64,000 nt of DNA from Takakia lepidozioides (Eukaryota; Plantae; Bryophyta), in contig CM060733.1 of NCBI GenBank assembly GCA_030704615.1, forward strand, positions 60,698,001 through 60,762,000, written 5' to 3'. The translations under genes and the position numbers were made by a program. Under the pieces are notes generated by a model. It was not told the DNA's origin. It worked only from the letters and a program-made list of their open reading frames with translations, and searched no databases. Below, piece after piece: positions 6,910 to 39,579 of the stretch. Within the stretch, counting starts at the first letter, position 1; each line of letters begins with the position of its first letter.

Positions 6910-7103
6910 CACTACAGGAAAAGGGGGGGTTAATGACACCGCGGAAACGGCGCAGCCACGCCGCAACGTCACTAAACGCCGCTTTTGAGGCAGGGGCGCA
7001 GGCGCCCTTTTGCCACGTCCGGGCGTGGCACGATCGTCCCCGGGGCGTCACTAATCGGTCGTCGCATAAATGCGACGAATGGGGGTTGTAAGTCGTTACC
7101 CCA

Positions 7104-12647: not shown

Positions 12648-12686
12648 TTTACCCCTCCCTCTCTCAAAAAGCCGTGTCCTCACGGT

Positions 12687-18440: not shown

Positions 18441-18678
18441 GATTTTGGGGGTGAATTGGGGGTGGTTTTTTGTTTTTTGCCTGGTTTTGTATTTGGGGAT
18501 GGGAGACCTTACAGTTCATTTTCTCTGATTTAGCAGGTACACAATTGAGCAAGCATGAATCGAGGGTGAGGACGGTGCGACACATGAATAAGATGGAAGA
18601 TGGAAAGATGGAAATATTTTTACAGGAAATGAACTGAAAAGCTCTCAAGGGTTCAGTAGGCTGACCCTGGGACTAGGA

Positions 18679-20850
18679 CTAGTCATCCTCATCCTCATCC
18701 TCAGTGGAGGACTCAGAGCTATCCGATGAGCCTGATGACTCCGCGCCCTTTGCCAAAGCACGTAAATGAGGCGGCGTTCCCCTAAGTCCCATAGAGCTCT
18801 CATCCAATCCCTGGCCATGACCCTCAACCTCATCCATACTAGTGCCCTGTAGTGCATTCATCCCCTCTGTGTTGGCCATGTTCTTCATGAGGGATTGCCA
18901 ACCATGCTCCTTGGCGTAGTTGTACTCTACCGGAGATGGACTCCTCTTAAACGCGCGTAGCTACACATGCCACAAATTAAAGTTAGTTCTTCGCGATGAT
19001 GGAGCCAAAAAGAAGACATAATAAAATCCATAGGGAAGTACGACTTACAAATCGCAAGATAAAACCCTTGGATCCGCCGGTGCCCCACTTGTGTGTGGAT
19101 TCGTGCTTATCAAGGCGGACTGTTGTTGCTTCGCATGCCCGGTCAAATTTGGCCTTGTTTGCGGCATCAGTCTCTCCCGCAATGAGTGCATCCCACGATA
19201 CCTATGCACCCCTCCCCCCAACAATTAGTGAATTACACACATACGTTGCATCGAATCCACCTCATTAATGCACATGCAACAAATGGAAGGTGACATGATT
19301 CAAGATTTGCCAACCTGTGTAATTCCATAAGGTGGTTTGGGTATGGCCCCCTTTTCCGTTGCCCTCCGAATGATCTGTCTGGCACGGTACCTCCTGTCCT
19401 TCAAGTTTCGCCCCACCATCTCCATCACCCTTGTGTCACTCCAATTGCCTGGAAACCGGCGGTCTAACTCACGGGCATACGCCCGCTTTGCGCCAAAGTG
19501 CTGATCAGCCCACTCGATGTGCAAAGGGAACCACCTCAATGCGAGTTCGAAGGTTGGCTTCTTCATAGCCTCCCAGAACGCACCGCAGGGGTCACCATGG
19601 CGATTCAGCTCCACCGGTGGCACCACGATCTTTGCCAACTCCACGTCCTGTATCGCCAAGGCCATCCCACCCTCTCCCTTCTTTGTAGCCTCCTTCCCCT
19701 GCTCCTTTGTTACCCCATTGCCCTCCCCCGCATGCACACTCACCCCTTCCTCTCCATGGGACTTCTTTTTCTTCTTCTTCTTTTCCTTCCCATTCTCCAC
19801 GACCATCTCCTTTCCCTTCCCCACTACTTCCTCTCTCTCCTTCTCCCTCTCCCTTCTCTCTCTCTCTCCTCGGCATCCCCTTCATTGATGGTAAAAGAGA
19901 TCTCGGGAGATCGAGGCCTCTTCTTCTTACCTTTGGTGTTCAGGTCCTTCATGAACACCACGTGCTCTCCCTCATTGGCAACCCCACGGGACTGCACCAA
20001 TGAGGCCAGCCATGTTGCTGCCTCCTGAAGACAAATAACCCCTCCAAATTCAAAAAAAGAAACAAACAACAAAGAAAATCATGATGCAAAGGAAAGGATA
20101 AATCATGGAACAAGGTGCGACAGCTGTACCTTTGCAAGCTGTCCAACTCGCCCCTGGTGTCACCCGATGTGGGAGGAGTCCCCGTTTCCGGATGTGCCCG
20201 CTCTATCCCCTCCCGGAGCGCCACTAGAAGTAGATTGCAGATGTGGATCATAGCCGGCGGCGGCGGCGGCGCCCCGTAGTCCAGGCCCTTCTTTGCTGAC
20301 CGCTCAGGCTCAGGGGGCGGTGTCGCTGATCGGCTAGGCTGCTCCGAACCGGCCCATACCTCCTCCTCTCCCCCCCCCCCCCCAAATGCGTATCAGGGTA
20401 GAAGCCCTCACCTGGCTTGACTTCTTCGAGGCGCTTCGCTATCTTGGCCACTTCATTGGCCCTCCTCGTCTCCTCCTCCCTCATCGACAACAATGGGCTG
20501 GCAATGGAGGCATTCAAAGGCCCTTGAACTTGACGTTGGGCCTTGGCAAGTGCAGCCTTTGCTGCGGAGGAAGGGGTCGCTTTGGGGGTGACATCCCAAA
20601 GGTGCCCATACCGGGCCCCCGAACGGGTGATGTGCTTGCCAAGGTACATTTCACCCGTCTTGGTGGCCGGGGTGAGGGGGGGGTACTGGCCTCGGGGGCA
20701 GACGAGCCGTCCGGCTGTGGCTGTCGACAAGGCTGGTTAGCCGTGAGACGCCCTGGCGAGTCACACGTGCCGGCAGAGCAAACGGATTGTCCGCCCCTTT
20801 CTTTGGGGCACGGGACTTCTTCTCTTTCCCCATAAGCTGGCACCTGTCAT
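18679..20850 (-). CDS. CACTA TnpA-like accessory protein, multi-exon, probably degenerate
   Basis: Exon 19316-20025 (ELNRHGDPCG...WADQHFGAKRAYARELDRRF...GRNLKDRRYRAR...PPYGITQ) splices to SWDALIAG...THKWGTGG (~19050-19201). Acidic C-terminus. Lies inside the CACTA element next to subterminal repeats. Confidence 0.6.
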
Positions 20851-20979
20851 GCAAACCCACAAGTTGGCCTCATTAGGAACATTCCAGATCTAAAACAAAA
20901 AAAACCAAGCATGTCAGGGGCTGAGAGCAGCAAGTGCTCGGGGTCTCGAGAGGGGGCAACAAAGAGAAAAGAAAAAGGT

Positions 20980-21051
20980 GGGGGGGGGGGAGTGACTGAG
21001 CACCACCACCAGCTGCTGAGCACCACGGGCTCAGTCACTCCCCCCCCCCCC
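20980..21051. repeat. Inverted repeat / foldback (22-bp arms, 27-nt loop)
   Basis: G11-AGTGACTGAGC ... GCTCAGTCACT-C12, flanked by an A-rich arm on the left and a T-rich arm on the right. Confidence 0.85.
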
Positions 21052-21137
21052 ATTTTTTTTTTTTTGGTTTCCTGATCTCTCCCTCTCTTTGTCCCTCTCT
21101 CTCCCTCTGTTGTTGGTGGATCTACCCACTCAATGTA

Positions 21138-21563
21138 GTGGAGATCAAACCTGAGTTACTACGCACTAAAACCGATTCCCAATACGTGGGGTTGGAAGCT
21201 TGTTTCATGAATATCCAGATTACAGTCTCAAACAGTGACACAGGTGAGTTCCATTTCCAGAAATATGACAAGAGAAGACTACTCCCTTTCTCTTACACTC
21301 AATATATCCAGTTCTTATCCAATAGGCCTGTGAATCAATCTTATAACATTGTGATTTCACAAGCTGTGCCTATTCTATACATTTCCAGCAATGCTGATTT
21401 GGCTGGGAAGGAGTGTAGCATTCTGATTAACACTCTTGGGAGGAATGGTTTCAAGACCAGAAAACTTGCTCGTATCTTGACAAAATTCCTTGAACGTGGT
21501 TCATTCCCTGGCCTGTTCTTCCCTGTACAAGAGCTTATTGAGAAACTGAAAGGTACTTTCTAA
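21138..21563 (+). mobile_element. 5'-truncated Penelope-like retroelement fragment (RT thumb / C-terminal region)
   Basis: FMNIQI...FQKYDKRRLLPF...FLSNRP...YNIVISQ...LINTLGRNGF matches the YDKR-type PLE RT thumb. The ORF stops without a C-terminal GIY-YIG. Confidence 0.65.
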
Positions 21564-24543
21564 GAACTTATCCAGAGCTAAGTTATACCATTGAACTCTC
21601 CAATCTTTTCTAGTGATACTATACTAGTTTTGCTATGATACATTTTATGCCAACGTTTCATTCTTGATCCAAGGAAGTGAGGATGTAGGATTCTACTCCT
21701 TTGGATAATATAATATGAGGATAGAACTACATGAAAGAGGGAAAAACTTATGAGAAGAGGTCTGGTATGCACTCCCTTACGGGGTGAGTGCATACCACAC
21801 TCACTCCGTAAGGTTCTGCCATGCCAAGGGATTGGCTGGTGGGTCCCTCTCTCTCCCTCTCTCCTTCTCCCTCTATAACTCTTTGGATTTCATCTGGCCT
21901 TAACCTTTTGAGGTTATTTAGTTTTTCATCCCAACCTTTTTCATCCAAATCTGGATGATATTATTATAGGATGATGAAACTTAATGTACAGAAAGCTTGG
22001 TTTACCATCTATTTCTTTCATCTAAACTGGATGAACTACATGAATAATGGTTACCTATTTTAAAATCCAAAAGAATAATAAAACTACCATCATAAATGAT
22101 GGCAGTTATTAAACCTAAGCCTATACCATAACCCTAAAAGATACATTTTTATTGGATGTCATCCATTGACAAAGTGCTTCTCTTGATAAAATGTGATTTT
22201 TCATCCACCCTGGATGAGAAATCGGGAAGTTGTGCCCTAAGCAGGCCGACACATTTCACAGCACTGAACTCGTGCTTCAGTGAACCTTGATGATGCGCCG
22301 TGTAAACCTGCTCCCCTGCTGCTACATGGTACTCGTGATGGCTGGCTCTTGGGATGCGCATTGGCGGTTTGACAGATTCCTCTCTGGCAGACGACAACGC
22401 GATGATCGCTTTGCTCAGAAACTCATGGTTCTTTATTTTGCAGCGACGCTTTTACTCCTCATTGGGAAGTACTCTATCCCTATTTATCTACAGATTACAT
22501 GTTGCTCTCTTTTTGTATGAGCCATTCTCTATCTGTGAATGCTTCTACTTTGATTGCGTTCTGTTGGAGACGATCTGTTGGACGCCATGGCGCAGGGCAT
22601 ACCACAAACACTCAAGGTTTTTTGAGTTTACCCTTGCTTGAATTGTGATCTGTACATGCTTTAGAATTCAACACTGACATGGATAGCAACTGTGAAGACC
22701 TGCCACTCACCTGCTGCATCCTCACTAACACACATCGCTATGTGGTGGTTTTTGGGACGGGCACAGGTGAGGGTCTTCACTTGTCTTGATTTCTTGAAGC
22801 TTGCAGCTCCTGTTCTTGCAAATGTGGATACTGCTACTGCCTAAGCTGCTGATGCCATTTGCTGTTTCAAACTGCCACCATGCTGCTTCAGACCTGCTCC
22901 AAGATGGCTCCAATGAGGATCTGCTTCTCTCCTTACCCCTGTTTTTGGTTTTTTACAACCACATTTGCATGTGTAGGAGTTAAGCTATGAAGGGTACAAG
23001 GGTACAAAATAGCAATTATTACTCTGACTGCTCTGATACTTGGCTCTGAAATGAAACTTCTTGGTATGACTTTGATGGATCAAAAGGATAGGCTCTGATA
23101 GATAACACACATTCTTCAAGGCCCTCATATCATTTTGGTTTCATGGCTTGATAATAAACAGGGTTCTGATCTGCTCTTTCACCTTGGCAGAACTATTTTA
23201 TGAGGCCTTAAAATACCATTCTAGGCCTATACCTGCTTAAGGGGGCTCAACCCTGTTGTTTCTTCTTCCTTTTTAAGAATCTTGCTTGTATCTTGGTTCT
23301 GAAACATCAACTTCAAACCAGTACTGTTTCTTAGGGAAGTGAAATGATCAAGACCTGGATTTTGTTTGCCTTGGCCCGTTAAAGACTCTCAATTTAAAGG
23401 CCTGGCTGCAGGCAGGGTTCTTCTGAGTTTCTTTGTTAACTCAGATCTTTGGAGGTTCTAGAATACCACTCAAGACCTAGATCTGTTTTGGAACACTCAA
23501 CCTTGCATAGGTTTCATGTTTGTGGTTTGGCATTGATACATCACCAAACTAGCTTTGGAACGAAACCTCTCAGCTTGACTCTGTTGTGTCAAACAGGTAC
23601 GCCTTGTTTAGGGAACACACACACTCATTAAGGCTCTCATAGCAGTCTGAATTTGAGGGCTGATAGCAGGCAAATTTGAGATAATTTGCCTTGCTTCTGT
23701 TTTATGATTCCTGCTTGTGACACGACACTGAAACGTCACCTTCAGGCCAGCAATAGCCTCTAGGGAGAAGACTTGTTCAAAACCTGGATGTTGGCATGCA
23801 GCCTCATGATATATACCATGTCTTTAACCATGCCAATAGGGCAAGAGGAAACATGATGTAAACCAGCAAATGCTTAAGGCATATTTGTTTGAATGTTTCA
23901 AACTCAACTTGAATTGTTTTTTAGCATGAGTCTTGGGGACTGTCCCAAGACCTGCAATCTGGTTTTCACAACTTGTTTTGCTAAGGTGTTGTGTCTACTT
24001 GCAAATACTTAAGGCATGAATGGCTGGCTGTTTCAACTTGAAGTGCTATGAGCTTGATTCTGGGAAATATCCCCAAACCTGCAATCTGGTTTTTGAAATG
24101 AGTTTGAAATGAGGTTTTGAAATGATGGTGCAAACTATGGTGCTTTCATGATATGATTGACTTGGAATCCCACCCTCCCACCCTGTTTTTTCAGAGACCC
24201 TGAAATGTAATGGGGTATTCAAATGAGATTGTAAACATGAAAGGGAATGTTAGATGGTGCCCTGTAAAGGGCTGTTTTGTCTTTCAATGACAATGACCTT
24301 AGCGGTCTTGTCCATGTCTTGACATGACATGTATATCTTCCCTCTCTTTATCTGATCAGTGTACTTAGTGGTTTTTGTACACACCATCTACCCTTACCCT
24401 TCTCCTTTTCACCTTCTCATTTTGATATATTGACAAACGTTCTCGGGGGGCCTTGACAGAAAGTCACCAAAGGAGGTCCTAGCTGGAATGAGGACCTCAT
24501 AGCCCTGGGGTATCAGTCCCCACTACCTCCTCCAATTCCTGTT

Positions 24544-25371
24544 GTGCAGGCAACCCTCGCACAAATCACACCAAGTGACTTCCATGCTGCATTGCAAAAG
24601 ATGGATACTGAGGCCTTGGAAAATTCAGGTGATGAAAACCCCGTGTTACTACTTGAAACCTTGGCTTTGGAAAATTGGGTTGCACTTGGCATCATGGCAA
24701 ATAAGAATGGCAGGTACCTGGAGAAGCTCCAGGAATTCAATACTAAAATGATTGAGGTACTGGAAGATGATGCCGAGGAGCTGATACAATGGGAAAAGAA
24801 GGGATCAGCCATTGAGGCAGCTCTTAGAATGGCAAACCCAGAAGATGACCAGACTGTCTCTACGCAGAAATCTGCAAACACATCTGAAAAAGACTTCATC
24901 CCTTCTGTAAGTAATCACCCAATCCTTGGGCACATGATTTTACCGGATGAAGAAAAAGAGGCAGTGAGAGAATTCTGTGAACAAGTAGAAATCTCACAAG
25001 TGGAACAAGAAAGGGCAGCAGGTGCCACTCCTGGAAATCTGCAGTTTGTCCCTTGGTTGCCTCCCCGTGCAGTTGAATTAGAGGTTGCCAATAACGACCA
25101 CATGATGTGGCACCCACATGCTAATATCAACTTATTGGCACCCATTTCTATTGAAATGTGGGTCAAATGGGGCAACATAACTCCTGCTGAACGCAATAGA
25201 TGTGCACATGATGCTAAGGAGGGAACTGATTCAAGTCCTTTACTGTTTGATCTGAGTTCCATATCTCCAGCCACCTTATTTTTGTTTGTGGGTCGACCAT
25301 CGATATGGCCAGCCGGTGCAATTTCTCCTGCTGCATCTCCGGATGCACATGCTTGTCATAGTGTGTTTTGA
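24544..25371 (+). CDS. Orphan acidic, predicted helical protein; converges on and overlaps the ParB-like gene
   Basis: 275-codon open frame with protein-like composition over the first ~225 aa. No motif recognised. Confidence 0.4.
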   Translation: MQATLAQITPSDFHAALQKMDTEALENSGDENPVLLLETLALENWVALGIMANKNGRYLEKLQEFNTKMIEVLEDDAEELIQWEKKGSAIEAALRMANPEDDQTVSTQKSANTSEKDFIPSVSNHPILGHMILPDEEKEAVREFCEQVEISQVEQERAAGATPGNLQFVPWLPPRAVELEVANNDHMMWHPHANINLLAPISIEMWVKWGNITPAERNRCAHDAKEGTDSSPLLFDLSSISPATLFLFVGRPSIWPAGAISPAASPDAHACHSVF

Positions 25372-26510
25372 TCTGCTGAAGGAACTCAGAACCAAGTCCA
25401 GGATCTACTATTCTAAGCTGCTTTCCGAAGGCGGACATCAATTTGGTTCTTCGCATTTCAAACTCCTTCTTTATTGCAGCTTCCACACCCTTTGATGTCC
25501 TTAGTTCCTCTGGTGTAGTGCGGTAATATTCGGATTTTCCCTTCTCAGCTGCCTCTGCCAGTTTTTGCTGCATTGATTCAAGTAGCGATTAGCACCGAAG
25601 GGACTACAAACATGTATTCAAAAAGTAAACTGAGTACAGACTCGGGCTTACCGCATACATGTACTCCAGAAACGCCTCTCGTGTCAAAGAATACCAAGTG
25701 TCTGCAGCTCTTCCTGTTTCGCACTTCTTGATTATATTAGGTGGGAGTACTATCCGAAAATCATCCAGCTTCATCAGACCAATCCTCTGAATTCGGAATA
25801 GTGTGTGGACCAAGCTTGTTGTCACATGCGATTTCTCTGTCGTTCTGCAAAAACATTGGAAACATTGCATTCCTTAACACTGTTTTTTGGGGATTAATAA
25901 GACACTACAGAGGGAATGAAATCTCCTGGATGACTTACTTGTTCACGTCGTGCATAGCTGTAAGAAGCCTAGCGATGTCGTTTCCAGGATCCAAAACCAT
26001 TGCCTCCACAGCAACATGCTTGTCTTTGTCTTTCGCATGGTGTTTCTGAATGTATCCCATCCATGCCAGCAATCGGTGGTTGTCGTCCCAGACGTAGAAC
26101 ATGTGATTGCAGAATTGCTGGGTGTTCTTTCCCATCATGAGGCCCAGCTCGAACTCCTCATTGGCATCTTTCCAGCACTCATCCCAGATATCACTGATCT
26201 CTGGAGACACTAATGTGCTTTTCCCATTTATATCCGTCAGTGACACATAAAAAACTTGTGCAACAAGTCTATATCCATGCACAAAATCACTCTCCAATTT
26301 TGTTATGTCATGGGAAAGAGGTGGATGCACAACAGGCATTGATATCATCCGGCACAGAGGGATGTCCAGACGCCCTCCAGATACGAGCATGTCCCTTATA
26401 ACCTCCTGAGAGTTTACCTTCTGGAATGACATGAGTTCTTTCACCTTGTCAAGGTAGTGCACTTCAATCAGCTTTGCTTGTGTAGATTGTGCTGAATTGT
26501 TTCACACCAT
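25214..26510 (-). pseudogene. ParB/sulfiredoxin-like domain protein, spliced, with premature stops
   Basis: VVHPPLSHDITKLESDFVHGY...FYVS...MFYVWDDNHRLLAW, where DDNHR at 26073-26087 is a variant of the ParB DGxHR motif. GT-AG introns at 25938-25845 and probably 25651-25604. In-frame TGA at 26502-26504 and TAA near 25590. Confidence 0.7.
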
Positions 26511-26717
26511 TCATAGTGAGTTTCTTTGAGACAAAGTGATGGTCGTTACCGCCGTTCACTATTTGCATATTACTCAGTCAGAATTGAATGGCATCGTGCA
26601 GAAAACTGTGAGGTCGAAGCCTACAGGATCAGAGGGGAAAAGATCTGGAGATGGGGACGAGTCCGGAAAAAGCTCAGAGAATACAGATGAAGCTCAATAA
26701 AAAAAGAACCTATTGCT

Positions 26718-27550
26718 GTGGCATGGCCACTAAGGACCTTCTACTACAAGCTCTGTGACAAAGGTGAGAACCTTACCTTGAGGACCAAAAATGACTTGCC
26801 GACTGGTTCGGCCAGATCCAAAAATCACAAGAGTCAACTCTTCAATTGGCATCGTCCCTTCATAAGATGTAACTGTGGACAAGGAGGGGCACCCTCTTCT
26901 TGCATTGGGAGTGTTGCTTGGTTTGACCATATGGTATGGTATATGCTGAACAATCTGATTGTGTTCTTCCCTGATGATGCCTATCCTTCGGTGCAAACCA
27001 AGTATTACAGCTTTCTGGTGTGGATCATGCGGGCTGCCAGATCTGCTGCACTGGCACAAATTACCTTCCACATGACCCGGGGGTTCATAATGGAAGCAGC
27101 TTGTGAATTCTCAATTGACCCCCAAGCCAAGTTGCTTGCGAAGTTAGGAGAATCCAAGGGGGCCAGATACATTGAGAAACTTGTGAAACCTGGGTCTTTT
27201 TCAGACAGCCTTCCCAGGCCACAATTCAATAGCTACAAACGGCAACGTATGGAGGGGATTTGCAGCTTGAAAAACGCGCCGTCATTGTGCTGGATCAGAC
27301 TTTGAAAGACTTGAACATTTTGATTGTTTCCCCTCCCCAAATGTCATTGGAGGCATACATAAGGAAGTGGAGAGGTCTCACCTGGAGATATTGTTTTTTC
27401 CGGGAGTTCTCCAAAGATGGTAACATTTTACGGTCCAACGACTTTGACAGTCAGGTTGGAGGAGAGTGGGCCATGATGCGAGTTGTGTATAGGTGCAATA
27501 TCATACTGGAAACTCTACTGCACTTTTTGAGAAATAATAAGGCTTCATAA
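26718..27550 (+). pseudogene. Orphan ORF, frameshifted near 27260-27300, divergent from the ParB-like gene
   Basis: Overlapping ORFs 26718-27305 and 27260-27550 with protein-like content (RCNCGQGG...CIGSVAWFDH). Ends immediately before the palindrome array. Confidence 0.45.
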
Positions 27551-27572
27551 GGATTGTAATCATAGATCCAAA

Positions 27573-28981
27573 TTGAATGTCGTTGACGACATTCACTTCT
27601 TTGTCTGAGTCATTCTTAAGCGAGAATTTGAATTCACCTGGATTAGGAGCTTAGGGTGTATTTATAGTGTCCCTGATTAGAATTGATAATGTCCCTGAAT
27701 GGCGTTGACGACATTCACATCCAGAGTTGTTAAGAGGTCCTCAGAGATATGTAAGTTTTTGTAATGTCCATAGAGTTTACAGTGAGGGTTCCTCACTCCA
27801 GTTTGTTGAATGTCAATGCAGACATTCAGTTGTTCTGCAATGCTTTTGCCTCTTGCGAGAAATCTTAAGGCTTGATTAGCTGTGTTATCAGAAATCCAAA
27901 GTGAATGTCGTTGACGACATTCACTTCTATGTCTGTGTCATTCACCAGCAACAATTTGAATTTACATGGATTAGGAGCTTAGGGTGTATTTATTGGTTCT
28001 TTGTTCGGAATTTTGTGAATGGCGTTGACGCCATTCACATCCAGTGTTATTATGAGGTCCTCAGTGTTATGTACGTTTTGAATGTCCATTGAGTTTTTAG
28101 TGGGGGTTCCTTACTCGAGTTTCTGAATATCGTTGCCGACATTCAGTTTCCATCCAATGATTTTGCCTCTTTTGAGAAATCATTAGGCTTGATTAGCAGT
28201 TTATTCACAAATCCAAAGTGAATGACGTTGACGACATTCACTTCTATGTCTGTGTCATTCCAAAGCGAGAGTTTGCATTCACGTGGATTAGGGTGTATTT
28301 GCAGTATCATTGAATGGAATTTTTTGGATGGCGTTGACGACATTCACATCCAGAGTTGTTAAGAGGTCCTCAGAGATATGTAAGTTTTTGTAATGTCCAT
28401 AGAGTTTACAGTGAGGGTTCCTCACTCCAGTTTGTTGAATGTCAATGCAGACATTCAGTTGTTCTACAATGCTTTTGCCTCTTGCGAGAAATCTTGAGGC
28501 TTGATTAGCTGTGTTATCAGAAATCCAAAGTGAATGTCGTTGACGACATTCACTTCTATGTCTGTGTCATTCACCAGCAACAATTTGAATTTACATGGAT
28601 TAGGAGCTTAGGGTGTATTTATTGGTTCCTTGTTCGGAATTTTGTGAATGGCGTTGACGCCATTCACATCCAGTGTTATGAGGTCCTCTGTGTTATGTAC
28701 GTTTTGAATGTCCATTGAGTTTCTAGGGAGGGTTCCTTACTCGAGTTTCTGAATGTCGTTGCCGACATTCAGTTTCCATCCAATGATTTTGCCTCTTTTG
28801 AGAAATCATTAGGCTTGATTAGCAGTGTATTCACATATCCAAAGTGAATGACGTTGACGACATTCACTTCTATGTCTGTGTCATTCCAAAGCAAGAGTTT
28901 GCATTCACGTGGATTAGGGTGTATTTGCAGTATCATTGAATGGAATTTTTTGGATGGCGTTGACGACATTCACATCCAGAG
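27573..28981. repeat. Higher-order tandem array of 14 x 24-bp palindromes GTGAATGTCGT-TG-ACGACATTCAC
   Basis: Copies start at ~27573, 27695, 27806, 27901, 28015, 28123, 28218, 28324, 28435, 28530, 28644, 28749, 28844 and 28950. Three spacer types form a ~315-bp unit; two units form a ~629-bp unit. Confidence 0.92.
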
Positions 28982-29383
28982 CTGTCGCGTGGTCCTGAGA
29001 GCTCCTTGGAGCAGTTCTCAGAGCCATTTCATTCCTTGTTTTTTTCATTCTGTGCTACTTGCATCTTACTCACTTCGCGCTTTGGTGGGTTGGGATTTAT
29101 CTCCTGTTTAACAAGTACACGAAATATGTGCTTATGGAAGGAAATCACCTGAGCGGTATTCCAGACTATCTTGACATGTGGTCAGACCCACAAACGATCC
29201 AACCATGTATACTGCAGGGATATTGAAGGACTGGAGTCCTCCTCACTTCATATACTGTGGCTGGTACCTTGACTGCCCACCGGAGCACACGACCTTTCAA
29301 GAACAACACATGAAATATTTGAACAATAATGTTGAGATGTTGGCGCCTCTGACTGACGAGTAGTACCAAAGAAACATAGCAAA

Positions 29384-30954
29384 TTGGCTGCCAAGGAGCC
29401 TGATGCTCAGGGAACGCCGCAGAAGGGAAAGAAGGCGGGCCGCAAACCAAAAGACAAGGCTCCTGATGTCATAGCCATCTCACCAGCAAAGCCAAAGGAC
29501 AAAGACAAGTCCAAAGAGAAGGAAAAGGAAAAGGACAAGGGGAAGGAGAAAGAAAAGGAGATGGAGAAGGAAAAGGAGAGTGGGCAGGACTTCATTGCTG
29601 GAAGATATACCCGCACAGTTCAGTGCGTGTTCGATGCCGCACCCTTCCAGTTCTGATTTGGCAGGAGAGATTAAAATTGTCAATGAGGTTTGGCTGGCGA
29701 TGATGCAGAGTCGAAAGAGAGGATACACTGGGGTGCCTTCGCCTACCTGGGACAACATAATCTCATTCCTCAATCTGGTGAGAATTCCAGTTTCTTTCCT
29801 TTTTCTCTGAAAGTTTCATTGGCAGTATTTCAGTCTGGTTCTTTGAACACATTCTTGCCATCGTTCTTAAAATAAACATGTCTGTTGCAGGTGAGCACTG
29901 GTCCCACCTTCGTGTGCGGTGTGCAGAAAACATATGCGGCTGACATTGTCATTCTCGATATCCCGGATGGCCAGCCTGTGCCAAAGGTTCTTCCAAAGGG
30001 CAAGACGCTAGGCTGGAACAAATTCGAGGACAACTACTGGAGCTGGGTGTTCGGGTTCTGTAATAATTTCCTCTCTGATGCAGGGACACTTCTGCTTTTT
30101 CAGTCATGTGACAAAGATAGTCGTCGGTCATTGGCATCATACTTGAAGTCTTCAGGGTTTGAAGTTTTGCGCACATGGGATTGTGTGAACAGCCTCTACT
30201 TTGTGAAAGGGGGTTTCCCTGGTCAGCTGGTATGCCATCTCCCTTCTGTTTGTGCTTTCATGGTGAGTTTCAATGTTCTCTGCAGCTCCACTCTAGAAGA
30301 ATCTGTCATGATCGACACCGATCATCACCGATTCGTGATAAAAATGATTGTTTTATGCCTGAGTTCTGAATAGCCGGTGTACACACTTCTACTATAGATT
30401 GTGTTTACCACACTAACCTGCTATCTTTGGCAGACAAGGATGTTCGAGGCGATCTACTTGCGGAGGATTCGCACCTCAAAGACACCATCCTCCATCCGTA
30501 GCTTTGAGATTTCTGACCAGGGTTGTTTCGTCAACCCCCCCTATGAGCCGCATGTCGATGATATTTTGTACAACTTCATGCAGTCTAGTCAGGCTCTGAA
30601 GAGACCAGATGGCACTCCCTGGAGAGGTGCAAAGGAAAAATCCCCTGCGTTCATGCAAATACTGCTGGAGTCATGCAGCCACCACTCTGCACGGGTGGTC
30701 GATCTTTCTGTGTCCACAGGTTCGTTCTCTCCCTTCCAAATTGATTTTCTTTCACCAGTTCCATCTGCTTAAATCCCCCCCACCAAACTGTTCATGTCCT
30801 CCTGTCTGGTGCAGGAGCAACTTACCATGCATGCAAGGCAGGCGGAAGAAGCCTTTTTGGCATGGAGGGTGATTCTGACCTCTACAACACAGTGCTCCTC
30901 CCCCTTTTGTCTGGCTCCACTTCAGGCACACAGACTGATCGGATTCAAATTTGA
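29384..30954 (+). CDS. Beta-class N6-adenine/N4-cytosine DNA methyltransferase-like gene (N6_N4_Mtase type), intron-containing; 5' end uncertain, possibly degenerate
   Basis: Exon 29891-30229 carries a motif IV-like ADIVILDIPD and FLSDAGTLLL. Exon 30434-30719 (WRGAKEKSPAFMQILLESCSHHSARVVDLSVSTG) splices in frame to 30815-30954 (ATYHACKAGGRSLFGMEGD), giving motif X/I-II after motif IV. A K/E-rich region lies upstream (29384-29656). Confidence 0.78.
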
Positions 30955-32172
30955 AATGATGACGATCCCGAAGATAAGCAGGTTGACAATGACTTTTCAT
31001 GTGCGTAAGTGCTAAACCCACTTTGGGAGCCATACTCAATTTCTCAATAACATCAAAGTTACAGTAATAATTTTTTCAGGCTGTCTTTCAGGAAAGGCAG
31101 CGGTGGATCTTCAGGAGATACAGTCATTTGTGGCGAGTCTGTTTTTCGACAGCCCCCTTTCCAATTTTCTGCTTCCTGATTATGCCGAAGCAATGGCACT
31201 TCACGCGGCCGAGTCCCTATCCCCTGACTTTTAACTGCCCGGCCGTAGGTGTAGCCAGCGTAGATCCGGAGTTCTTAAATACTTAGACTTAGATGCAGAG
31301 GAAGCGGGGATACATTGTATTGACTCTAAGTCAGACTGAACTATGTTCTTTTAATATTTTGTTTCATCCTCTTTGGAAAACGTTGAATCCCCTTCCTCCA
31401 CCGTAGTTGTTCCTTTGGAAAGAAAAATAATCAAAGAATCAACTACCATTTAAATTGCAATATGTATGAATCCATCTCACAAACCTCCCTCACTCTTGTC
31501 ATATCCATTTTGCTTTCATCTACAGTGTATTCATGCGTGCTCCATTCATTAATGTTTTCCTTTGTTCAACATCCATTGTACATTCATCCTCTGTACTCTT
31601 TAATCCACCCCACAAACCTATCACACTCATGTCATATACGTTGTGCATTCGTCTAAAGTTTTAGTCATGCATCTTCTTGTCATAAATGTTTTCCATTGTT
31701 CAACAACCATTATACATTCATCCATTTGACTCTTCTCCATCCCTCATTCATCCATCTACATTCATTTTTCACACTCATCCATATGTTTATCATCCAACTG
31801 TACATTCATCCATCATTTATTCATCTGTTGCTTTCAGGTGGGAATGACCATTGCCTTTTATTATGTCGTCCAGCTTGTTTCCGCGGTAAAGGGTGCCAAT
31901 CCGCGGGAATACACTCCACTTCTTCCTGGGCGCGTGGTGACGCGGCCTTCAAGTGTGATGACGTGGAGTGAGCCCCGTGATGTGGCATTGGCGCAAGGTG
32001 ACGTGGCGTGAGCGCAGTTGCGCTCACGCGCTCACGTGACCAGGCTCACGCCGAGGCATCCCTGGTCCAACCACATCCACCTTTGACCCCCCCGACAGGA
32101 TTGAGTGTTGGTGCACTAAGTGTTGGGAACGGATACCGCCGGGCGGCACCAGACCACCGAGGCGGCGACCGC

Positions 32173-33432
32173 ATGTTGTCGAAAAACATTACAAGAAGAA
32201 CAAGATTGCGGATGCGGCAAAGGTGAGTGTTTTTCCCACCTCTCTCATTAACATTCATTCAAGGTACATTTAGGTTTATCTAATAATATAGTATGATTGG
32301 TAAGCATACATGAATCAAAATTATGACATAAGTATTGATGCGTCGTTCACTACGCACATTGCAGCCACGACTTGATGCCCAAGCTCGCAATCACATTGCA
32401 CAGGAGGCATTTTGCGCCGGATTACTTACAGAATTTGTGCCAGAGCATGTGCCCGATGTGACCAATTGGTTCCCCCAGCAGCACGTAGATGAGATGCGTA
32501 GGGTCGAGGGGTATCGTAGGTGTCGTAGGTGTTATGGCCGGCGACGAGCAGCCCCCCCCCCCCCCCTGTTTCTTTGCCTAATCGGCTGCACCTCCGACAT
32601 TACATCCTCAACCACCTCCACTTTCATCTCCTCTGCCAGCAGTACCACCTCCACCTTCACCACCACCACCACCTCAACCTCCACCTCCACGTGCATGTGC
32701 CCCCCGAACCCCTAGGAGGGGTTGGCTTTGCCCTAGGTTTCCTCCCCTTCGGCTTGGGCGGCCTGAGCCGGATCCTCGCCCCCGATGGGAAGCGCATATG
32801 ACTATGTTACTAAGGACCGTCCAGCCTCGTTGTTGGGGGAATCATCTCGACCCTCCCACCCCCATCCGAGAAAATGTGGAGTTCGAGTATTGGGGAGACG
32901 GTATGTTGTGAGAGCCGCTACAGACCCTGCTATGGGTTGGGGTTTATTCACGGTCAATGATATTGTGGTTCCTCCTTGGAGAAACAGCATGGTGGACTTG
33001 TTTCCTTACTACGGTCCATACTACACCTCCGCGGAGTTCCGTACATTACGCCTCGAAGCCCCATACATCCTACCCTATATTTCGTGTGTCAACGGACAGG
33101 ATGTACGTAGACGGGGGTTGTCTCCTATTGAGGTCAGATTTTGTGATGGTGACCCCGACATCTTCAGCAATGTTGTTGGGCTGGTCAATAGTTCTTTTGG
33201 TCATCCTAGGATAACCAATGTAGTATGGGACGAACGAAGCGATGGGCATGAGAGCTTTTGTGGTCATACGTCAGTATACTGTGAGGGGATGCACATGTTT
33301 GTGATGAATGTGCTAGTAGGACTATTAGGGCTGGCAGCGAACTATTTGCATCATACGAGTTCTCCCGGGATGATTGGGACCTCCGATTACAGCGTGAGTA
33401 GGATGTGTATGATAGAAATAGGGTTCCTTTGA
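32173..33432 (+). pseudogene. SET-domain (lysine methyltransferase fold) protein with Pro-rich N-terminus; frameshifted
   Basis: YVVRAATDPAMGWGLFTVNDI...LFPYYGP...Y...DGDP...NVVGLVNSS...NVVW follows the SET pattern GxGLF...YxG...xxN(H/S)S..N. Putative first exon 32173-32222 with a gtgagt donor. Confidence 0.65.
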
Positions 33433-34421
33433 GACAGGGATCGCGTAGAGGGGCATTATAGATATCCTCATGATGTATTTTGTATACATCCGATTAATCG
33501 ATTGATGTAAATTTTTTTCTTGTTGCTCGTGTGGGTTGCAACTTTGCATATGTGATCTAAACATACTTATGCACATGTGGACCAAATATGAGCTTGAACC
33601 AAGTTGATTCAATGGGTCATTCTAGTGTTGAACGCAGTTACGTGTCATAGAGACGGAAAATTGTGTTTCGCCTACAGATGATTTTTTTTAATTCCATTTT
33701 CAAGTCATATGCTTAATGATAGCATATGCAATGTGCGTGCAAAATTTGGGAGTAAACAAAAGTCATTTGGACCCATAACCAGATTTTGTTTTCTCATTTG
33801 CACTCCAAAATTGAGTTATCTTCAACTTTGTGCACTCTTCCTAGAGAGTTCTGCAAAAGTGACCCTAGAAACACACTTATTTTTTTTCCATTTTTTGCAT
33901 GGATGTAGTGGTGCAAAGCTCGATGTCACAGAATAAAATAGAGCTAAAAATAAAATCATTACGCCCCTCAAAACCGCAATCATATATTTTCTAAATGTAA
34001 ATATTTATTTTAAATTCATTTAAATTCGATTTAATTCAAAATTGGTGCAAGGGTGAGTGCGTCGTTGGGGAGACAATTAATTTTTTATTTTTTTTTAATT
34101 TTTTTTTAAATTTTTTTATTTTTACCTGCTGGATTTTTGTACAGGTGTTGCACACATATTTAAGCACATGTAGGAAAAAATGAAGCTTGAGCCACATCCG
34201 TTTGTTGGGTGCAATGGCATGAGAGGATTTTCTTTCACATTAATAAACAAAAATTGGTTGATAGGGTGAATGCGTCATTGGGGGGGCAAATGATTTTGTT
34301 TGGGTTTGAAACTTTGCATGCGTGTACGTTGCGCACATACATGTAATTATTGAATGACATATTTGATGCACACACACATTGAAGGTTGTTGTTTGCATTT
34401 CGCTTATAATGAAGTGTATGG

Positions 34422-37400
34422 TTGCAAGGACACATTATAATATATGTCCCTATGTTCATTTGTTCGTATCAGGACTTTGTCCATCCCTTCCCGGTCTTTT
34501 CTCTTGGCACCCCATCCGAAAACAACCCAAGTACATCAGGCGGGAGCCGTGGGCGAGACGCCGCCCCCACGGTACCGGACGATGATGACGATGACAGTGA
34601 TAGTGACAGTGACAACAACAATGAACATGGAATTAACCAGGAGGATGTGCAAGCCATGGAGGATCTCTTCATGCATCATGTGGGCGCTGATGCATCCCAT
34701 GAAGAGGGAACCCGACCAATCGATGATCCTGAAATGGCCCCCTCAAATGACATGGAGAGGGAGGCGAGAACTCTCTTGTACGAAGGGGCGAAAGTGAGTC
34801 GACTTTCAACAATCTTACTTTTGCTCAATCTTCAAATTCGATTTGGCATAAGTAATGTTGGGATGTCTGCCATAATGCGAACTATTGCAAACTATATCCT
34901 TGCTCCACACTTGAAACCCAAGTTGCCACGATCGCGGAAAGAGACGCGCGAAGTCTTGGACTCTGTGGGGATGGGCTATAAGATTTTTCATGCATGTCCA
35001 TGTGATAAAACCCTATATTACGGAGAGGATTCGCATTTCACCAAGTGCCCAAAGTGCAAGAAAGACCGATATCGGGATGATGTCCAAGGGAAAAAAGTAC
35101 CACGCAAGGTATAAGCACCATTCCCCCTCGCATGGAGATTATTAGAGAGTAGTACTCATGCAAGATCTGATTGTGGTTTTGGAAGGAGTGAGTGAGGAGT
35201 GGAAGGAGCGACGTTTGGTTTTGACCATTTACACCCAAATGAGGGAGAAGCTGCATAAAGGGAAAGACATAAGGGTGTTGTATTATGTGTGCTAATGGGA
35301 TGATTACATGTGGGGGGCGTGGGGTATTTCATCCTAGAAAATGCATTACTTTCCGATCATCCCGCGATTGAGGGCACAGCACCGAAGCCCCGAATTGGCC
35401 AGACTCATGAGATGGCACGCCTCGCATCGGAGCCCCCCGAGAAAGGTGTGCGGGCCACAAGATTCACGAGCATGGAGGCATATTGAAGAGATGTGGCCTT
35501 TTCTCTTGGAGGACCCACGACATGTCCACCTCGGCTTCTCCTCGGATGGGGTCAACCCATTCTCTGTCCAGTCATGTAGTCATTCCACTTGGCCGGTGAC
35601 CATGGTGAATTACAACATCCCTCCGTATCTTTCAATTAAAAAAGGTCATATCATGTTGGCTGCCATTGTGCCAGGTGAGTGTACTCATTTCATGTTTATT
35701 ATTGCCTTCGACTTTACATTAACTTCTGATCTTTGACGCAATTCGGATGCAAGATTGATGAGTGACATAATCATGGAGTAAGACGTGTAATTCATTTTGT
35801 AGTATAATCTGCATATTGATGGAGCATTGAAACAATGATATAAATGTCTCAAAGGGAAAAAACAAGTGGCAAACATGGACACGTACTTGCGACCTCTTGT
35901 TGATGAACTTAAGAGCTATGGAGGGGGGTCCGGCATTGGATGCTTCACTTGACCCTATGGCCGGACAATCTTTTCAGATGAGAGACATCTTGCTTTGGAC
36001 AATGCATGATTATCCAGGTATATTATGTTCCCCATGAACAACCCGCGTACATTCACTTGTCAATGCCGGATGAGGATGAGGATTGGGATTGATTGAAGTA
36101 GCGGCGACAGTCTTGTGCACCGTAGTGGGATAGATGGCATTATGGGCCATGCACATGACAACTTTTTGTTTTTGCTAATGTGGCGGGATGTGTAGTACAA
36201 GACTAACTGTTTGCTTGGGGCTAAGCACCAAAGGGTACCATGCATGCTTGCATTGTGGCGATGATTTTGATGCACATAGCTCCCGCCATCTTCACAAGAT
36301 GGTGTATCCTAACTACCGCAAATTTCTTCCTATGAGCCATCGATGGAGAAGAAGAGAGAAACACTTGTTTGATGGCAAAGAGGAAGTACGTCCCCCCTCT
36401 ATGACACCGTCCGGGCAGTTTTGGGAGGACCGATGGAAGGAGGCCCATGCGGGCACGGACGGTGAAGTGGACGTGCCCGACATGAAACGACTTTCAATCT
36501 TCCACGAGTTGCCATATTGGGCGGTACATATTCCACAAAAACACCGTCAATATCCCTATGCATGCATGTGATATTGCACATTTGGTATGCGTTGCATTGT
36601 TACTTTCACGTAAATTTTTTTGTGTAAGTCTTTGTGGGTGGGGATATATGTAGGACCTGAAGATTCACCATCTTCCAGATCCCATGCATATTGAGAAGAA
36701 TGTCTACTCGTCATTTTTTCGGGTTCTTCATGGCACGCCGGCAAAGAAGGGAGTGGCTGCAAAAAGAGATTCTCTCGGTGTTAGAAAGGAGCTTGAGGAG
36801 CAGGGTTGCATACGCCATCTATGGGCCGAACAAAATTGTGTGGACCCAAAGGGTGTTGTACGGTGGAAGTATAGGCGCGCACCTTGGCAATGGACAAAGG
36901 AGGAATACAAGAAAGTGATAGCCACCATAAGTGCTGTCCGAACACCAACTGATTATGGGTCATCCCTCCGTACGAAGTTCAGCGAAGAAGACGGGGTCCA
37001 TGGTTTGAAATCTCATGACTACCACAATCTATTGCAAGACATCTTACCCATTGCAGTACGTGGGACATTGACTCCCGAGGTTCGTGAGACAATCTATAGA
37101 TTGGGAGGCTTGTTCTGGTGGATTTGCTCCAAAGAGTTGGAAGAAGCAGATTTTCCACGCATGAAGAAGGAGGCGATGGAGGTAATATGTATGTTGGAGA
37201 TGCACCTCCCTCCCTCCTTCTTTGACATCCAAGTGCACTTGGTAGTGCACTTAGTGGAAGAGGCTTCGATTGTCGGCCCCGTTCATTCTCGGTGGATGTA
37301 CTTCCTTGAGCGTTATATGAAGACTTTGAAAGGATTTGTAAGACAAATGGCGCACCCGGAGGGTAGCATGGCGGATGGGTATACGTTGCAAGAAGCTATG

Positions 37401-38623: not shown

Positions 38624-38934
38624 ACACAAAATCAAAGCTACATAACAATTCTCGCACCGAACTGGACCCATCCCTTCGATTGATTGTACATGTACATGCA
38701 TATTGTACTTTATTTCTATGATTAATCAAATATGGCTGTGGCTGGTAGTCTATCAAGAAAGAAGGCAGATGCAATGAATATATTGGAGCAACACATACAG
38801 ATGTGGTATCAAGAGAATTATCAAAATGAATGTCACAATGTACAAGAAGGTCCACAACAACAAGCTAAACCATAAAGAAAAACAAACACCCTACACCAGT
38901 ACCATATGAAAAAAAAAAAAACTAAGAACCCCCA

Positions 38935-39504: not shown

Positions 39505-39579
39505 TGACCATAGTGAACTAATGTGATAAGTTGAGTTGGGTGTTTCCTAGAACAAATCTAGGCTGTCATTGTCAGGTGC

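What the first reader, a model, noticed from the sequence alone, without database searches (positions are those of the whole stretch)
24544..33432. Candidate new system: CACTA-borne module of a ParB-like gene, a palindrome array, a prokaryote-type N6A/N4C DNA methyltransferase and a SET-domain gene
Seen: between tnpA-like and tnpD lie, in order, an orphan ORF, a spliced ParB/Srx-like gene (DDNHR), a second orphan ORF, 14 regularly spaced palindromes, a spliced beta-class amino-methyltransferase and a SET-domain ORF. Known: ParB plus N6_N4_Mtase is a common phage/prophage pairing; ParB proteins load on palindromic parS sites; land-plant DNA methylation is mostly 5mC from DNMT-type enzymes. Inference: this is a mobile DNA- and chromatin-marking cassette in which a ParB-like clamp targets amino-methylation to the element's own array, possibly for self-marking or anti-silencing. 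This copy is partly pseudogenised.
Basis: partly seen in the sequence, partly recalled or inferred. Interest (0 to 1): 0.92.

Follow-up and report, generated by a model that had tools for sequence, protein, structure and literature searches.

The report
Transposon-borne ParB-methylase gene with palindrome array
A 35-kb CACTA transposon carries a rearranged copy of one long cargo gene that fuses a ParB-like domain to a bacterial-type DNA-methylase-like domain and has 14 palindromes in an intron; cargo genes of this kind were recently described in algal transposons, so this is a land-plant-type example, not a new kind of system.

Summary
The sequence features are mostly real. A CACTA element (6910-42134) has matching ends, a 3-bp target duplication and a TnpD transposase. 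It holds an ORF with a ParB/sulfiredoxin fold, exactly 14 palindromes and exons homologous to the C-terminal half of beta-class N6A/N4C DNA methylases.

The reading needs correcting in these ways:
- In 61 distinct related loci and two Adiantum fern proteins, the ParB-like and methylase-like parts are collinear exons of one gene. In this window the three 5' exons are inverted, so this copy is broken.
- The palindrome array lies in an intron. Two other lineages carry different palindrome arrays, one inside the same gene and one about 300 bp upstream of it. The array differs from the element's own subterminal repeats.
- The catalytic DPPY motif is replaced by D/N-[IVL]-P-x in every member seen, and the first glycine of the SAM loop is lost. 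Methylation activity is therefore doubtful.
- The window's NPPY lies in the wrong place and is not conserved.
- The SET ORF and both orphan ORFs have no statistical support and are absent from relatives.

ParB-like plus methylase accessory proteins, some with adjacent inverted-repeat arrays and a SET domain, are already reported in brown, red and green algal transposons. Verdict: a new member of a known kind, of moderate interest.

The parts
6910..42134 (.). CACTA/EnSpm transposon that contains everything below. Terminal inverted repeats lie at about 6910-6937 and 42107-42134, with GGT target-site duplications at 6907-6909 and 42135-42137.
   Evidence: TIR pair, TSD. A second TIR-like right end at 39504 has no matching TSD.
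25938..26501 (-). Exon P1: ParB/sulfiredoxin-fold domain with the D-D-N-H-R motif (family consensus DGNHR). It is inverted relative to the rest of the gene.
   Evidence: 12 homologues. A profile finds 1148 cluster representatives. AF2 model pLDDT 85.6. Foldseek top hits are all ParB/Noc/KorB/Srx and phage ParB-like proteins. No Pfam hit.
25607..25873 (-). Exon P2: conserved helical segment that follows the ParB-like domain.
   Evidence: Conserved in 67 of 82 loci by tblastn; profile hits and alignment A4. No PDB-sequence match.
25217..25588 (-). Exon P3: conserved segment, the last exon of the inverted block.
   Evidence: Conserved in 44 or more loci. No PDB-sequence match.
27233..27547 (+). 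Exon E4 (the exon probably ends near 27491). In relatives it follows P3 on the same strand within about 135-225 bp.
27525..28978 (.). Intronic tandem array: 317-bp unit x 4.6, each unit made of three ~105-bp subunits. It holds 14 palindromes (10-11-nt arms, TG centre) at 27574-28972.
   Evidence: Relatives have about 110-190 bp between E4 and E5; here the gap is about 1.7 kb.
29175..29360 (+). Exon E5 (probably starts near 29218 after a ...ctgcag acceptor).
   Evidence: Profile hits in 43 loci; sequence.
29384..29810 (+). Lysine/glutamate-rich linker and the segment before M1. In L002 this is one continuous ORF with E5.
   Evidence: TRF finds low-complexity repeats at 29494-29579.
29876..30370 (+). 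Exon M1: presumed N-terminal half of the methylase fold. The motif IV position reads D-I-P-D-G (29957-29971) instead of DPPY.
   Evidence: Profile hits in 34 loci; alignment A3. hhalign places it on the DPPY region of a phage methylase, but only at E 0.13. No PDB-sequence hit. The AF2 model is poor.
30398..30769 (+). Exon M2: target-recognition segment, motif X and the start of motif I (V-V-D-L-S-V-S-T-G at 30695-21). It contains the non-conserved NPPY near 30530.
30745..30951 (+). Exon M3 (probably starts near 30814): rest of motif I plus motifs II-III.
   Evidence: Pfam PF01555 matches the equivalent ORF of L001 (E 1.8e-5) and L019 (E 0.021).
31016..31231 (+). Exon M4: conserved C-terminal tail, cut short here by a stop.
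   Evidence: Conserved in 32 loci.
32767..33429 (+). SET-like ORF (G-W-G-L-F and V-N-S-S-F-G-H-P). A frame-shifted piece at 33285-33398 carries an E-L-x-x-x-Y-like motif. Unverified.
   Evidence: No Pfam, PDB-sequence or database homologue. Motifs seen. Absent from related loci.
24544..25371 (+). Orphan ORF 1 (275 aa). Its 3' end is antisense to exon P3. Not conserved.
26718..27305 (+). Orphan ORF 2 (195 aa), in the segment between the inverted block and E4. Not conserved.
34422..38254 (+). TnpD-type CACTA transposase gene (Transposase_21, DUF4218, DUF4216).
41657..41886 (.). Subterminal repeats of the CACTA element, built on a different palindrome (inverted GCCACG half-sites). Related sets lie at 38960-39434 and 7002-7032.

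Best explanation
What it is (shown). The region is cargo of a CACTA transposon: one multi-exon accessory gene. Its product, about 900-1100 aa in intact relatives, has an N-terminal ParB/sulfiredoxin-fold domain of the DGxHR type, a conserved middle region of unknown fold, a basic/acidic linker, and a C-terminal domain homologous to beta-class (N6A/N4C) DNA methyltransferases. ParB domain first and methylase last is the domain order common in phage and bacterial ParB-methylase proteins.

State of this copy (shown). The three 5' exons (25217-26501) are inverted relative to exons E4-M4 (27233-31231), so the full-length protein cannot be made from it. A 1.45-kb array of 14 palindromes fills the intron between E4 and E5.

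How it most likely works (inferred). In intact copies the protein acts on its own element. It binds as a dimer to the arrayed inverted half-sites carried in or beside its own gene, through the ParB-like and middle regions, and so builds a protein-DNA complex on the transposon. The catalytic D/N/S-P-P-Y/F/W tetrapeptide is replaced throughout this clade, and the SAM loop has lost its first glycine. I therefore think the methylase-like domain more likely serves as a DNA- or SAM-binding module than as an active N6A/N4C methylase. The benefit to the element (escape from silencing, or help in assembling or keeping copies) is unknown.

The SET-like ORF and the two orphan ORFs are not demonstrably part of this.
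For: - One gene: in L001 and L002 and in all informative metagenome loci, exons P1-P2-P3-E4-E5-M1-M2-M3-M4 are collinear on one strand.
- Linkage: of 24 distinct loci with at least 3 kb downstream of P1, 21 have M exons and 16 have M1+M2+M3. None is in another orientation.
- NCBI models from Adiantum join the DGNHR domain to M1 (P0110) or to M2/M3 (P0150).
- ParB fold.
- Methylase homology.
- Degenerate motifs.
- Purifying selection on the ParB-like exon among intact ORFs: median dN/dS 0.14 over 43 pairs.
- Arrays with the gene in other lineages: a 51-59-bp-period array of inverted CAACTTT/AAAGTTG half-sites in the intron before M1 in six locus groups, and a third palindrome just upstream of P1 in L037. 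No such array lies elsewhere in 476 kb of 61 distinct loci.
- In those arrays the half-sites are invariant while the centre varies without covariation, which fits protein half-sites better than a hairpin.
- The internal array differs from the element's subterminal repeats.
- Published parallels: PMC12477816; bioRxiv 10.1101/2025.02.11.637652.
Against: - No DNA-binding domain was identified in the middle region.
- The ParB fold matches have weak E-values (0.01-1), and no Pfam ParB model matches.
- The M1 half of the methylase fold has no significant match, so the reading of motif IV rests on position and pattern.
- The closest relatives, L002 and L001, have no palindrome array.
- The arrays in the moss-like clade are one inherited event, and many of those copies are decayed, with 2-8 stops in P1.
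- TnpD lies near the gene in only one related locus group, L049/L050/L068.
- Nothing here shows binding, methylation or expression.
Confidence: 0.6

Rival explanations
1. One reading: separate ParB-like, methylase and SET genes form a self-marking cassette. A ParB clamp loads on the palindromes and directs active 6mA/4mC (and histone) methylation to the element.
For: - Domain homologies.
- Arrays recur with the gene.
- The same idea has been proposed for algal transposon proteins.
- Red-algal PAG2 joins PF01555 to SET, and the window has a SET-like ORF 1.5 kb after the methylase exons.
Against: - It is one fused gene in relatives.
- The ParB-like motif is DGNHR, not the CTP-clamp motif.
- Motif IV lacks P-P-aromatic in every member, and the window's NPPY is misplaced and not conserved.
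- The methylase exons are less constrained than the ParB exon in the same locus pairs: dN/dS 0.54 against 0.30.
- SET has no statistical support and is absent from relatives.
Confidence: 0.15
2. The palindrome array is an unrelated minisatellite, or an expanded hairpin-forming repeat, that happened to grow in an intron. It has no functional tie to the protein.
For: - It is absent from the two closest relatives and from most loci.
- Sequence, period and position differ among lineages.
- Copies vary by CpG-type decay, as expected for silenced repeats.
- It is one tandem expansion: all 14 palindromes have the same orientation.
Against: - Three different palindrome arrays lie in or next to the same gene, and none lies in the other 76% of 476 kb of related loci or in the rest of the 64-kb window.
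- Inverted half-sites stay invariant while the spacer varies.
- Red-algal elements independently show inverted-repeat arrays beside their ParB-like gene.
Confidence: 0.3
3. The whole region is decayed captured host or bacterial gene fragments (pack-type cargo) with no function for the element.
For: - This copy is inverted and truncated.
- Many related copies carry stops.
- The flanks are rich in other transposons.
Against: - The family is very large and diverse: 1148 representatives at 50% clustering.
- Nine exons stay collinear at down to about 35-40% identity.
- Intact ParB-like ORFs have dN/dS 0.14.
- The same architecture is present in ferns.
Confidence: 0.1

Closest known systems
ParB-like + DNA methyltransferase accessory protein of the Ectocarpus Sola1-1_Ec32 transposon (Dinatale et al., Genome Biol 2025, PMC12477816). 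[quoted passage not shown]
   Same: One long protein (1104 aa there, roughly 900-1100 aa here) with an N-terminal ParB-like domain and a prokaryote-type N4C/N6A methylase domain. It is carried as cargo by a giant DNA transposon and is proposed to bind and mark its own element.
   Different: - The transposon superfamily differs (Sola1 there, plant-type CACTA here), as does the host lineage (brown alga there; fern and moss-like relatives here).
- Here the catalytic tetrapeptide is degenerate and palindrome arrays lie in introns.
- Sequence relatedness could not be tested because the algal proteins were not available to the tools.
PAG cassette of red-algal Plavaka (EnSpm/CACTA-superfamily) elements (Petroll et al. 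2025, bioRxiv 10.1101/2025.02.11.637652; Curr Biol 2025): PAG1 (unknown), PAG2 (PF01555 methylase + SET), PAG3 (ParB-like + 2OG oxygenase), with tandem inverted-repeat arrays next to PAG3.
   Same: - Same superfamily of transposon.
- A ParB-like domain detected only by remote methods; their best HHpred hit, 7BNR, is also in my Foldseek list.
- A PF01555-type methylase, tandem arrays of inverted repeats beside the ParB-like gene, an ORF of unknown function, and possibly a SET domain.
   Different: - There ParB-like and methylase are in two genes, each with another partner domain. Here they are fused.
- No 2OG-oxygenase signal was found here.
- SET is unverified here and missing from relatives.
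- The transposase here is the plant TnpD type (Transposase_21/DUF4218/DUF4216), not Plavaka.
Phage and bacterial ParB-domain + N6_N4 methylase fusion proteins (ParB-terminase loci; Iyer et al., BioEssays 2016, PMC4738411)
   Same: Domain order is ParB-like at the N-terminus and beta-class methylase at the C-terminus. A mycobacteriophage 'DNA methylase' is among the structural matches of the ParB-like exon, and phage methylases are the only tblastn hits of the M2+M3 ORF.
   Different: The prokaryotic proteins are about 350-480 aa, have canonical DPPY and FxGxG motifs and no introns. Here a conserved insert of about 400 aa separates the domains and the catalytic motifs are altered.
Domesticated eukaryotic N4C methylases: Marchantia MpDN4MT1a/b (bioRxiv 10.1101/2021.02.12.428880) and bdelloid N4CMT (PMC8885841)
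   Same: A beta-class prokaryote-type amino-methyltransferase fold in a eukaryote. PDB N4C methylase chains (8s9m/8s9n) appear among the weak profile hits.
   Different: Those are host genes with an intact TSPPY-type motif and proven 4mC activity. They have no ParB-like domain and no palindrome array.

Membership tests
CACTA / EnSpm DNA transposon | CACTA... terminal inverted repeats with a 3-bp target-site duplication | tested here: met
   The ends at 6910 and 42134 both start CACTAC and match over about 24 of 28 nt; GGT flanks both sides.
CACTA / EnSpm DNA transposon | TnpD-type transposase (Transposase_21, DUF4218, DUF4216) | tested here: met
   E 3e-24, 6e-34 and 1.4e-3.
CACTA / EnSpm DNA transposon | Arrays of short subterminal repeats | tested here: met
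   Repeats at 41657-41886, 38960-39434 and 7002-7032.
ParB/sulfiredoxin-fold N-terminal domain (Pfam ParBc clan) | The fold | tested here: met
   AF2 pLDDT 85.6. PDB top hits are Noc, PadC, Srx, ParB, KorB and SbnI (prob up to 0.91, E 0.06-1, TM 0.3-0.54). BFVD top hits are phage ParB-like proteins (prob up to 1.0, E 0.011-0.2).
ParB/sulfiredoxin-fold N-terminal domain (Pfam ParBc clan) | Match to a curated sequence model | tested here: not met
   No Pfam family for any of 13 members at E up to 1. The profile finds no ParB chain in PDB sequences.
Chromosome/plasmid-partition ParB (CTP clamp on parS) | GERRxRA CTP-binding motif and an HTH that reads parS | tested here: not met
   The conserved motif is D-G-N-H-R-x-x-A-W. 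Profiles of the following exons match no HTH. Absence of an HTH is not proven.
Beta-class N6A/N4C DNA methyltransferase (Pfam PF01555) | Homology of the motif X-I-II-III half | tested here: met
   Profile A2 against PDB DpnA-type adenine methylase E 5.4e-7. hhalign against the phage SfV methylase gives probability 93.6%, E 2e-7.
Beta-class N6A/N4C DNA methyltransferase (Pfam PF01555) | Pfam gathering score | tested here: not met
   The best member, L001, scores 25.3 bits against a cut-off of 26.7. The window's exons give no hit. Exons were scanned separately, which lowers scores.
Beta-class N6A/N4C DNA methyltransferase (Pfam PF01555) | Motif order IV before X and I | tested here: inconclusive
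   M1 always precedes M2/M3, and its best alignment falls on the DPPY region of a phage enzyme, but only at E 0.13.
Beta-class N6A/N4C DNA methyltransferase (Pfam PF01555) | Catalytic (D/N/S)-P-P-(Y/F/W) | tested here: not met
   Window DIPD, L002 DLPE, L019 DIPE, L001 NQPS, A. nelumboides DVPF; others are D/N-[IV]-P/H/V-x.
Beta-class N6A/N4C DNA methyltransferase (Pfam PF01555) | SAM loop F-x-G-x-G | tested here: inconclusive
   The family has D-L-x-A-S-T-G: the first G is replaced and the second kept. A. capillus-veneris has Y-A-G-C-G.
SET domain (Pfam PF00856) | Match to the model or to a solved SET chain | tested here: not met
   No homologue in 5.8 billion proteins.
SET domain (Pfam PF00856) | GxG, NHSC and ELxF/YDY signature motifs | tested here: inconclusive
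   GWGLF and VNSSFGHP are in frame; SELFASYEF lies in another frame. The patterns were chosen after seeing the ORF.
Algal transposon ParB-methylase accessory genes / PAG cassette | ParB-like and PF01555-type domains carried by a giant DNA transposon, with inverted-repeat arrays beside them | tested here: met
   See the parts list; literature.
Algal transposon ParB-methylase accessory genes / PAG cassette | Sequence relatedness to the published algal proteins | not testable with these tools

The most novel reading that the evidence does not exclude
In this land-plant-type clade the methylase domain is catalytically dead. The ParB-like/pseudo-methylase protein together with its intronic palindrome array would then be a self-recognition device: the element carries both a sequence-specific DNA-coating protein and the sites it coats, for example to shield itself from 5mC/siRNA silencing or to hold copies together. 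This would be a eukaryotic transposon counterpart of a ParB-parS nucleoprotein complex that works without DNA methylation.
Probability: 0.15. Interest if true: 0.75.

Novelty: new member of a known kind. Interest (0 to 1): 0.45.

Why it matters
Transposons that carry their own chromatin or DNA-modifying cargo are rare, and they bear on how mobile elements escape silencing. ParB-like/methylase cargo has so far been described in algae. The evidence here places the same architecture in a plant-type CACTA element, with relatives annotated in two Adiantum ferns and many in moss/peat samples. It shows that the two domains form one gene, that palindrome arrays travel with that gene, and that the catalytic motif is altered across the clade. 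This yields clear tests: does the protein bind the palindromes, and does it still methylate DNA? It may also bear on where land-plant prokaryote-type methylases such as the Marchantia sperm 4mC enzymes came from, although no link to them was shown.

Tried and rejected
- Direct Pfam scans of all window ORFs in the region found nothing.
- phmmer of single ORFs against PDB gave only chance hits, for example an RxLR effector at E 2.7e-4 with two weak stretches.
- Database search with the M1 ORF and with the SET ORF found no hits.
- The AF2 model of the M1 exon alone was poor (pLDDT 66) and its Foldseek hits were meaningless.
- A family scaffold built on the L001 read-through, with X at its stop, recovered only the C-terminal methylase match.
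- The idea that the minus-strand block and E4 share a duplicated junction (the peptide D-Q-T-x-K-D-L-N) was rejected. The tail is native to P3 in relatives and there is no nucleotide similarity.
- The idea that the ORFs at 7880-10711 are tnpA co-occurring with the gene was rejected. They are Ty3/gypsy RT, RNase H and integrase.
- The idea that a 2OG oxygenase sits in the middle region, as in red-algal PAG3, gained no support.
- Covariation in the relatives' palindromes did not exceed shuffles.
- Rfam found no family in the window.
- Identifying the organism by exact look-up of the intronless RPN7 product failed: it is not on record.
- DNA for the two Adiantum loci was not retrievable.

Full report
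**Setting**

The window holds a CACTA element from 6910 to 42134. Both ends begin CACTAC and match over about 24 of 28 nt. The trinucleotide GGT flanks both ends. A TnpD-type transposase lies on the + strand: Transposase_21 at 35341-35733, DUF4218 at 36684-37472 and DUF4216 at 37712-38251. The subterminal regions carry their own short palindromic repeats at 41657-41886, 38960-39434 and 7002-7032. A second TIR-like right end lies at 39504. A Ty3/gypsy retroelement is nested at about 7.9-10.7 kb on the minus strand. I could not confirm a tnpA-like gene: the minus-strand ORFs at 12.7-17 kb match no family.

**The observation**

The ORF with the D-D-N-H-R motif lies on the minus strand (25938-26462).

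The palindromes are real and number exactly 14, between 27574 and 28972, with spacings of 95-122 bp. They sit in a tandem repeat of 317 bp x 4.6 whose unit is three diverged ~105-bp subunits. Shuffles expect none. No other site in the 64 kb matches even at 5 mismatches.

Direct Pfam scans of the window's ORFs gave nothing, so all domain assignments rest on relatives.

**The ParB-like part**

The 175-aa ORF has clear homologues, and their profile finds 1148 cluster representatives in the 1.84-billion-protein library. The only named ones among 20 looked up are hypothetical proteins of the ferns Adiantum nelumboides and A. capillus-veneris.

An AlphaFold model built with 13 sequences is confident (pLDDT 85.6). 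Its best PDB matches are all ParB, Noc, KorB, PadC, sulfiredoxin or SbnI. In the viral library they are phage partition proteins, a DndB-like 'sulfur modification protein', ParB-like nucleases and a phage DNA methylase. Scores are modest (E 0.01-1, probability up to 1.0), and no curated sequence model matches. The fold call is therefore supported; family membership at sequence level is not.

The invariant motif is D-G-N-H-R. From my own knowledge this resembles the DGQHR motif of DndB-type ParB-like proteins rather than the CTP-binding GERRxRA of partition ParB. Among intact ORFs the exon is under strong purifying selection, with median dN/dS 0.14 over 43 pairs. Selecting ORFs without stops biases this figure somewhat.

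**One gene, not two**

I fetched two contigs that encode homologues and 80 metagenome loci, mostly from moss- and peat-associated JGI samples.

In every informative locus the pieces homologous to the window's 25938-26501, 25607-25873, 25217-25588, 27233-27547, 29175-29360, 29876-30370, 30398-30769, 30745-30951 and 31016-31231 lie in that order on one strand. The gaps between them are intron-sized. I call these pieces P1, P2, P3, E4, E5, M1, M2, M3 and M4.

Of 24 distinct loci with at least 3 kb downstream of P1, 21 carry M exons and 16 carry M1, M2 and M3. None has them upstream or inverted. In L002, P2 and P3 share one ORF, and E5, the linker and the segment before M1 share another. The Adiantum gene models join the ParB-like domain to M1 or to M2/M3.

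In the window, P1-P3 read on the minus strand and E4-M4 on the plus strand. This copy therefore carries an inversion of at least 1.3 kb and cannot encode the full protein. I found no repeat that explains the breakpoints.

**The methylase-like part**

The ORF of L001 that spans M2+M3 matches Pfam PF01555 just under its cut-off (25.3 bits against 26.7, E 1.8e-5). L019 matches weakly.

A profile of M2+M3 hits a DpnA-type adenine methylase in the PDB at E 5.4e-7, followed by N4C methylases and M.MboIIA. It aligns to the C-terminus of the phage SfV methylase with 93.6% probability. tblastn of the L001 ORF against phages returns only DNA methylases. Homology of motifs X-I-II-III is thus established.

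M1 precedes this part in every locus. M1 has no significant match. Its best hhalign alignment (E 0.13) nevertheless places the family's D-L-V-x-x-D-[IV]-P on the phage D-L-I-V-T-D-P-P-Y, and the following hydrophobic G-x-x-x-L-F strand on the phage equivalent. From my own knowledge, the later W-x-x-x-N-x-x-P segment also resembles the PF01555 consensus.

At the motif IV position the window has DIPD, L002 DLPE, L019 DIPE, L001 NQPS and A. nelumboides DVPF. No member has P-P-aromatic. Motif I reads D-L-x-A-S-T-G, with the first glycine replaced.

Relatives have DPLA or DPLR there.

In the same locus pairs the M1 exon is less constrained than P1 (dN/dS 0.54 against 0.30), but those copies are decayed, with 2-8 stops in P1. 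I conclude that the domain is a true relative of beta-class amino-methyltransferases whose catalytic competence is doubtful.

**The array**

The array fills the E4-E5 intron, about 27492-29217. Relatives have only 110-190 bp there. The motif is absent from all 82 loci, and L002 and L001 have no array.

Other lineages do carry their own arrays at the same gene. In six locus groups (L020/21, L028-33, L039-41, L049/50/68, L062, L071), 3-8 copies of inverted CAACTTT/AAAGTTG half-sites separated by 8 variable bases repeat every 51-59 bp in the intron before M1. In L037 a third palindrome repeats three times about 300 bp upstream of P1.

No comparable array lies in the remaining 76% of the 476 kb of distinct loci. 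The six groups share one inherited array, so there are about three independent cases, not seven.

In the relatives' units the half-sites are invariant and the centre shows no covariation beyond shuffles. The variation there looks like CpG decay. This fits dimeric protein sites better than a selected hairpin. In the window, two copies (28016, 28645) carry a change on both arms that keeps the symmetry, but they are duplicates of one event.

**SET and the orphan ORFs**

The ORF at 32767-33429 has G-W-G-L-F and V-N-S-S-F-G-H-P. A piece in another frame (33285-33398) has S-E-L-F-A-S-Y-E-F. It is the only one of 15,135 ORFs in the window and loci with two of three SET-like patterns, but I chose those patterns after seeing it.

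There is no Pfam hit, no PDB-sequence hit and no homologue. Nothing similar follows the gene in relatives, where the gene ends with M4. The two orphan ORFs are not conserved.

**What is known**

- Dinatale et al. (PMC12477816) describe a 1104-aa ParB-like plus N4C/N6A-methylase protein carried by an Ectocarpus Sola1 transposon. [quoted passage not shown]
- Petroll et al. (bioRxiv 10.1101/2025.02.11.637652) describe red-algal Plavaka elements of the EnSpm/CACTA superfamily. These have PAG2 (PF01555 + SET), PAG3 (ParB-like + 2OG oxygenase), PAG1 (unknown) and tandem inverted-repeat arrays next to PAG3.
- Iyer et al. (PMC4738411) trace several eukaryotic methylases to phage ParB-terminase loci.
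- I found no report of this cargo in land-plant CACTA elements. The library searched is not complete.

**Verdict**

The finding is a real, rearranged copy of a transposon accessory gene of a recently recognised kind. The land-plant-type setting, the fused architecture, the intronic arrays and the altered catalytic motif are worth recording. The claim of a new system and the methylation mechanism are not supported as stated.

**Limits**

- Exons were searched one by one by reference.
- The source organism was not identified.
- DNA for the Adiantum loci could not be fetched.

Noticed in passing
window 7880-10711 (minus strand): A Ty3/gypsy retroelement (RVT_1, RT_RNaseH_2, Tf2-type integrase SH3) is nested inside the CACTA element near its left end. 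Similar retroelement ORFs in related loci gave a false impression of co-occurrence.
   Followed up: partly
window 38960-39504 and 41657-42134: There are two sets of right-end-like structures. A TIR-like CACTAC end at 39504 is preceded by repeats with inverted GCGACG half-sites. The end at 42134 is preceded by repeats with inverted GCCACG half-sites. This suggests a duplicated or second, non-autonomous end inside the element.
   Followed up: partly
window 12687-17013 (minus strand): A run of six long minus-strand ORFs (166-350 aa) has no Pfam match. It could be a divergent TnpA-like or other cargo gene.
   Followed up: partly
window 52270-57318: A LINE-type retroelement (endonuclease 55605-56498, reverse transcriptase 54061-55902, minus strand) lies among 40-79-nt inverted repeats.
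   Followed up: partly
window 59297-60457 (+): An intronless 386-aa RPN7 proteasome-subunit ORF, possibly a retrogene. The exact product is not on record in the collection.
   Followed up: partly
window 45445-46725 (+) and 63277-63876 (+): A 426-aa ORF with a C-terminal PEMT/ICMT-type methyltransferase domain, and an F-box/Kelch ORF. These are host genes or gene fragments outside the element.
   Followed up: no
L020, L028, L049, L062, L071 (P1 regions): The long moss-like contigs that carry the 51-bp palindrome arrays have 2-8 stop codons in the ParB-like exon, so that lineage of the family is largely decayed. Short peat-metagenome contigs hold intact ORFs.
   Followed up: partly
L001 13618-14544: In this 318-kb ENA contig the M1-like and M2+M3 ORFs are in the same frame, separated by a single stop. 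The gene has few introns there, which suggests a different, unidentified host lineage.
   Followed up: no
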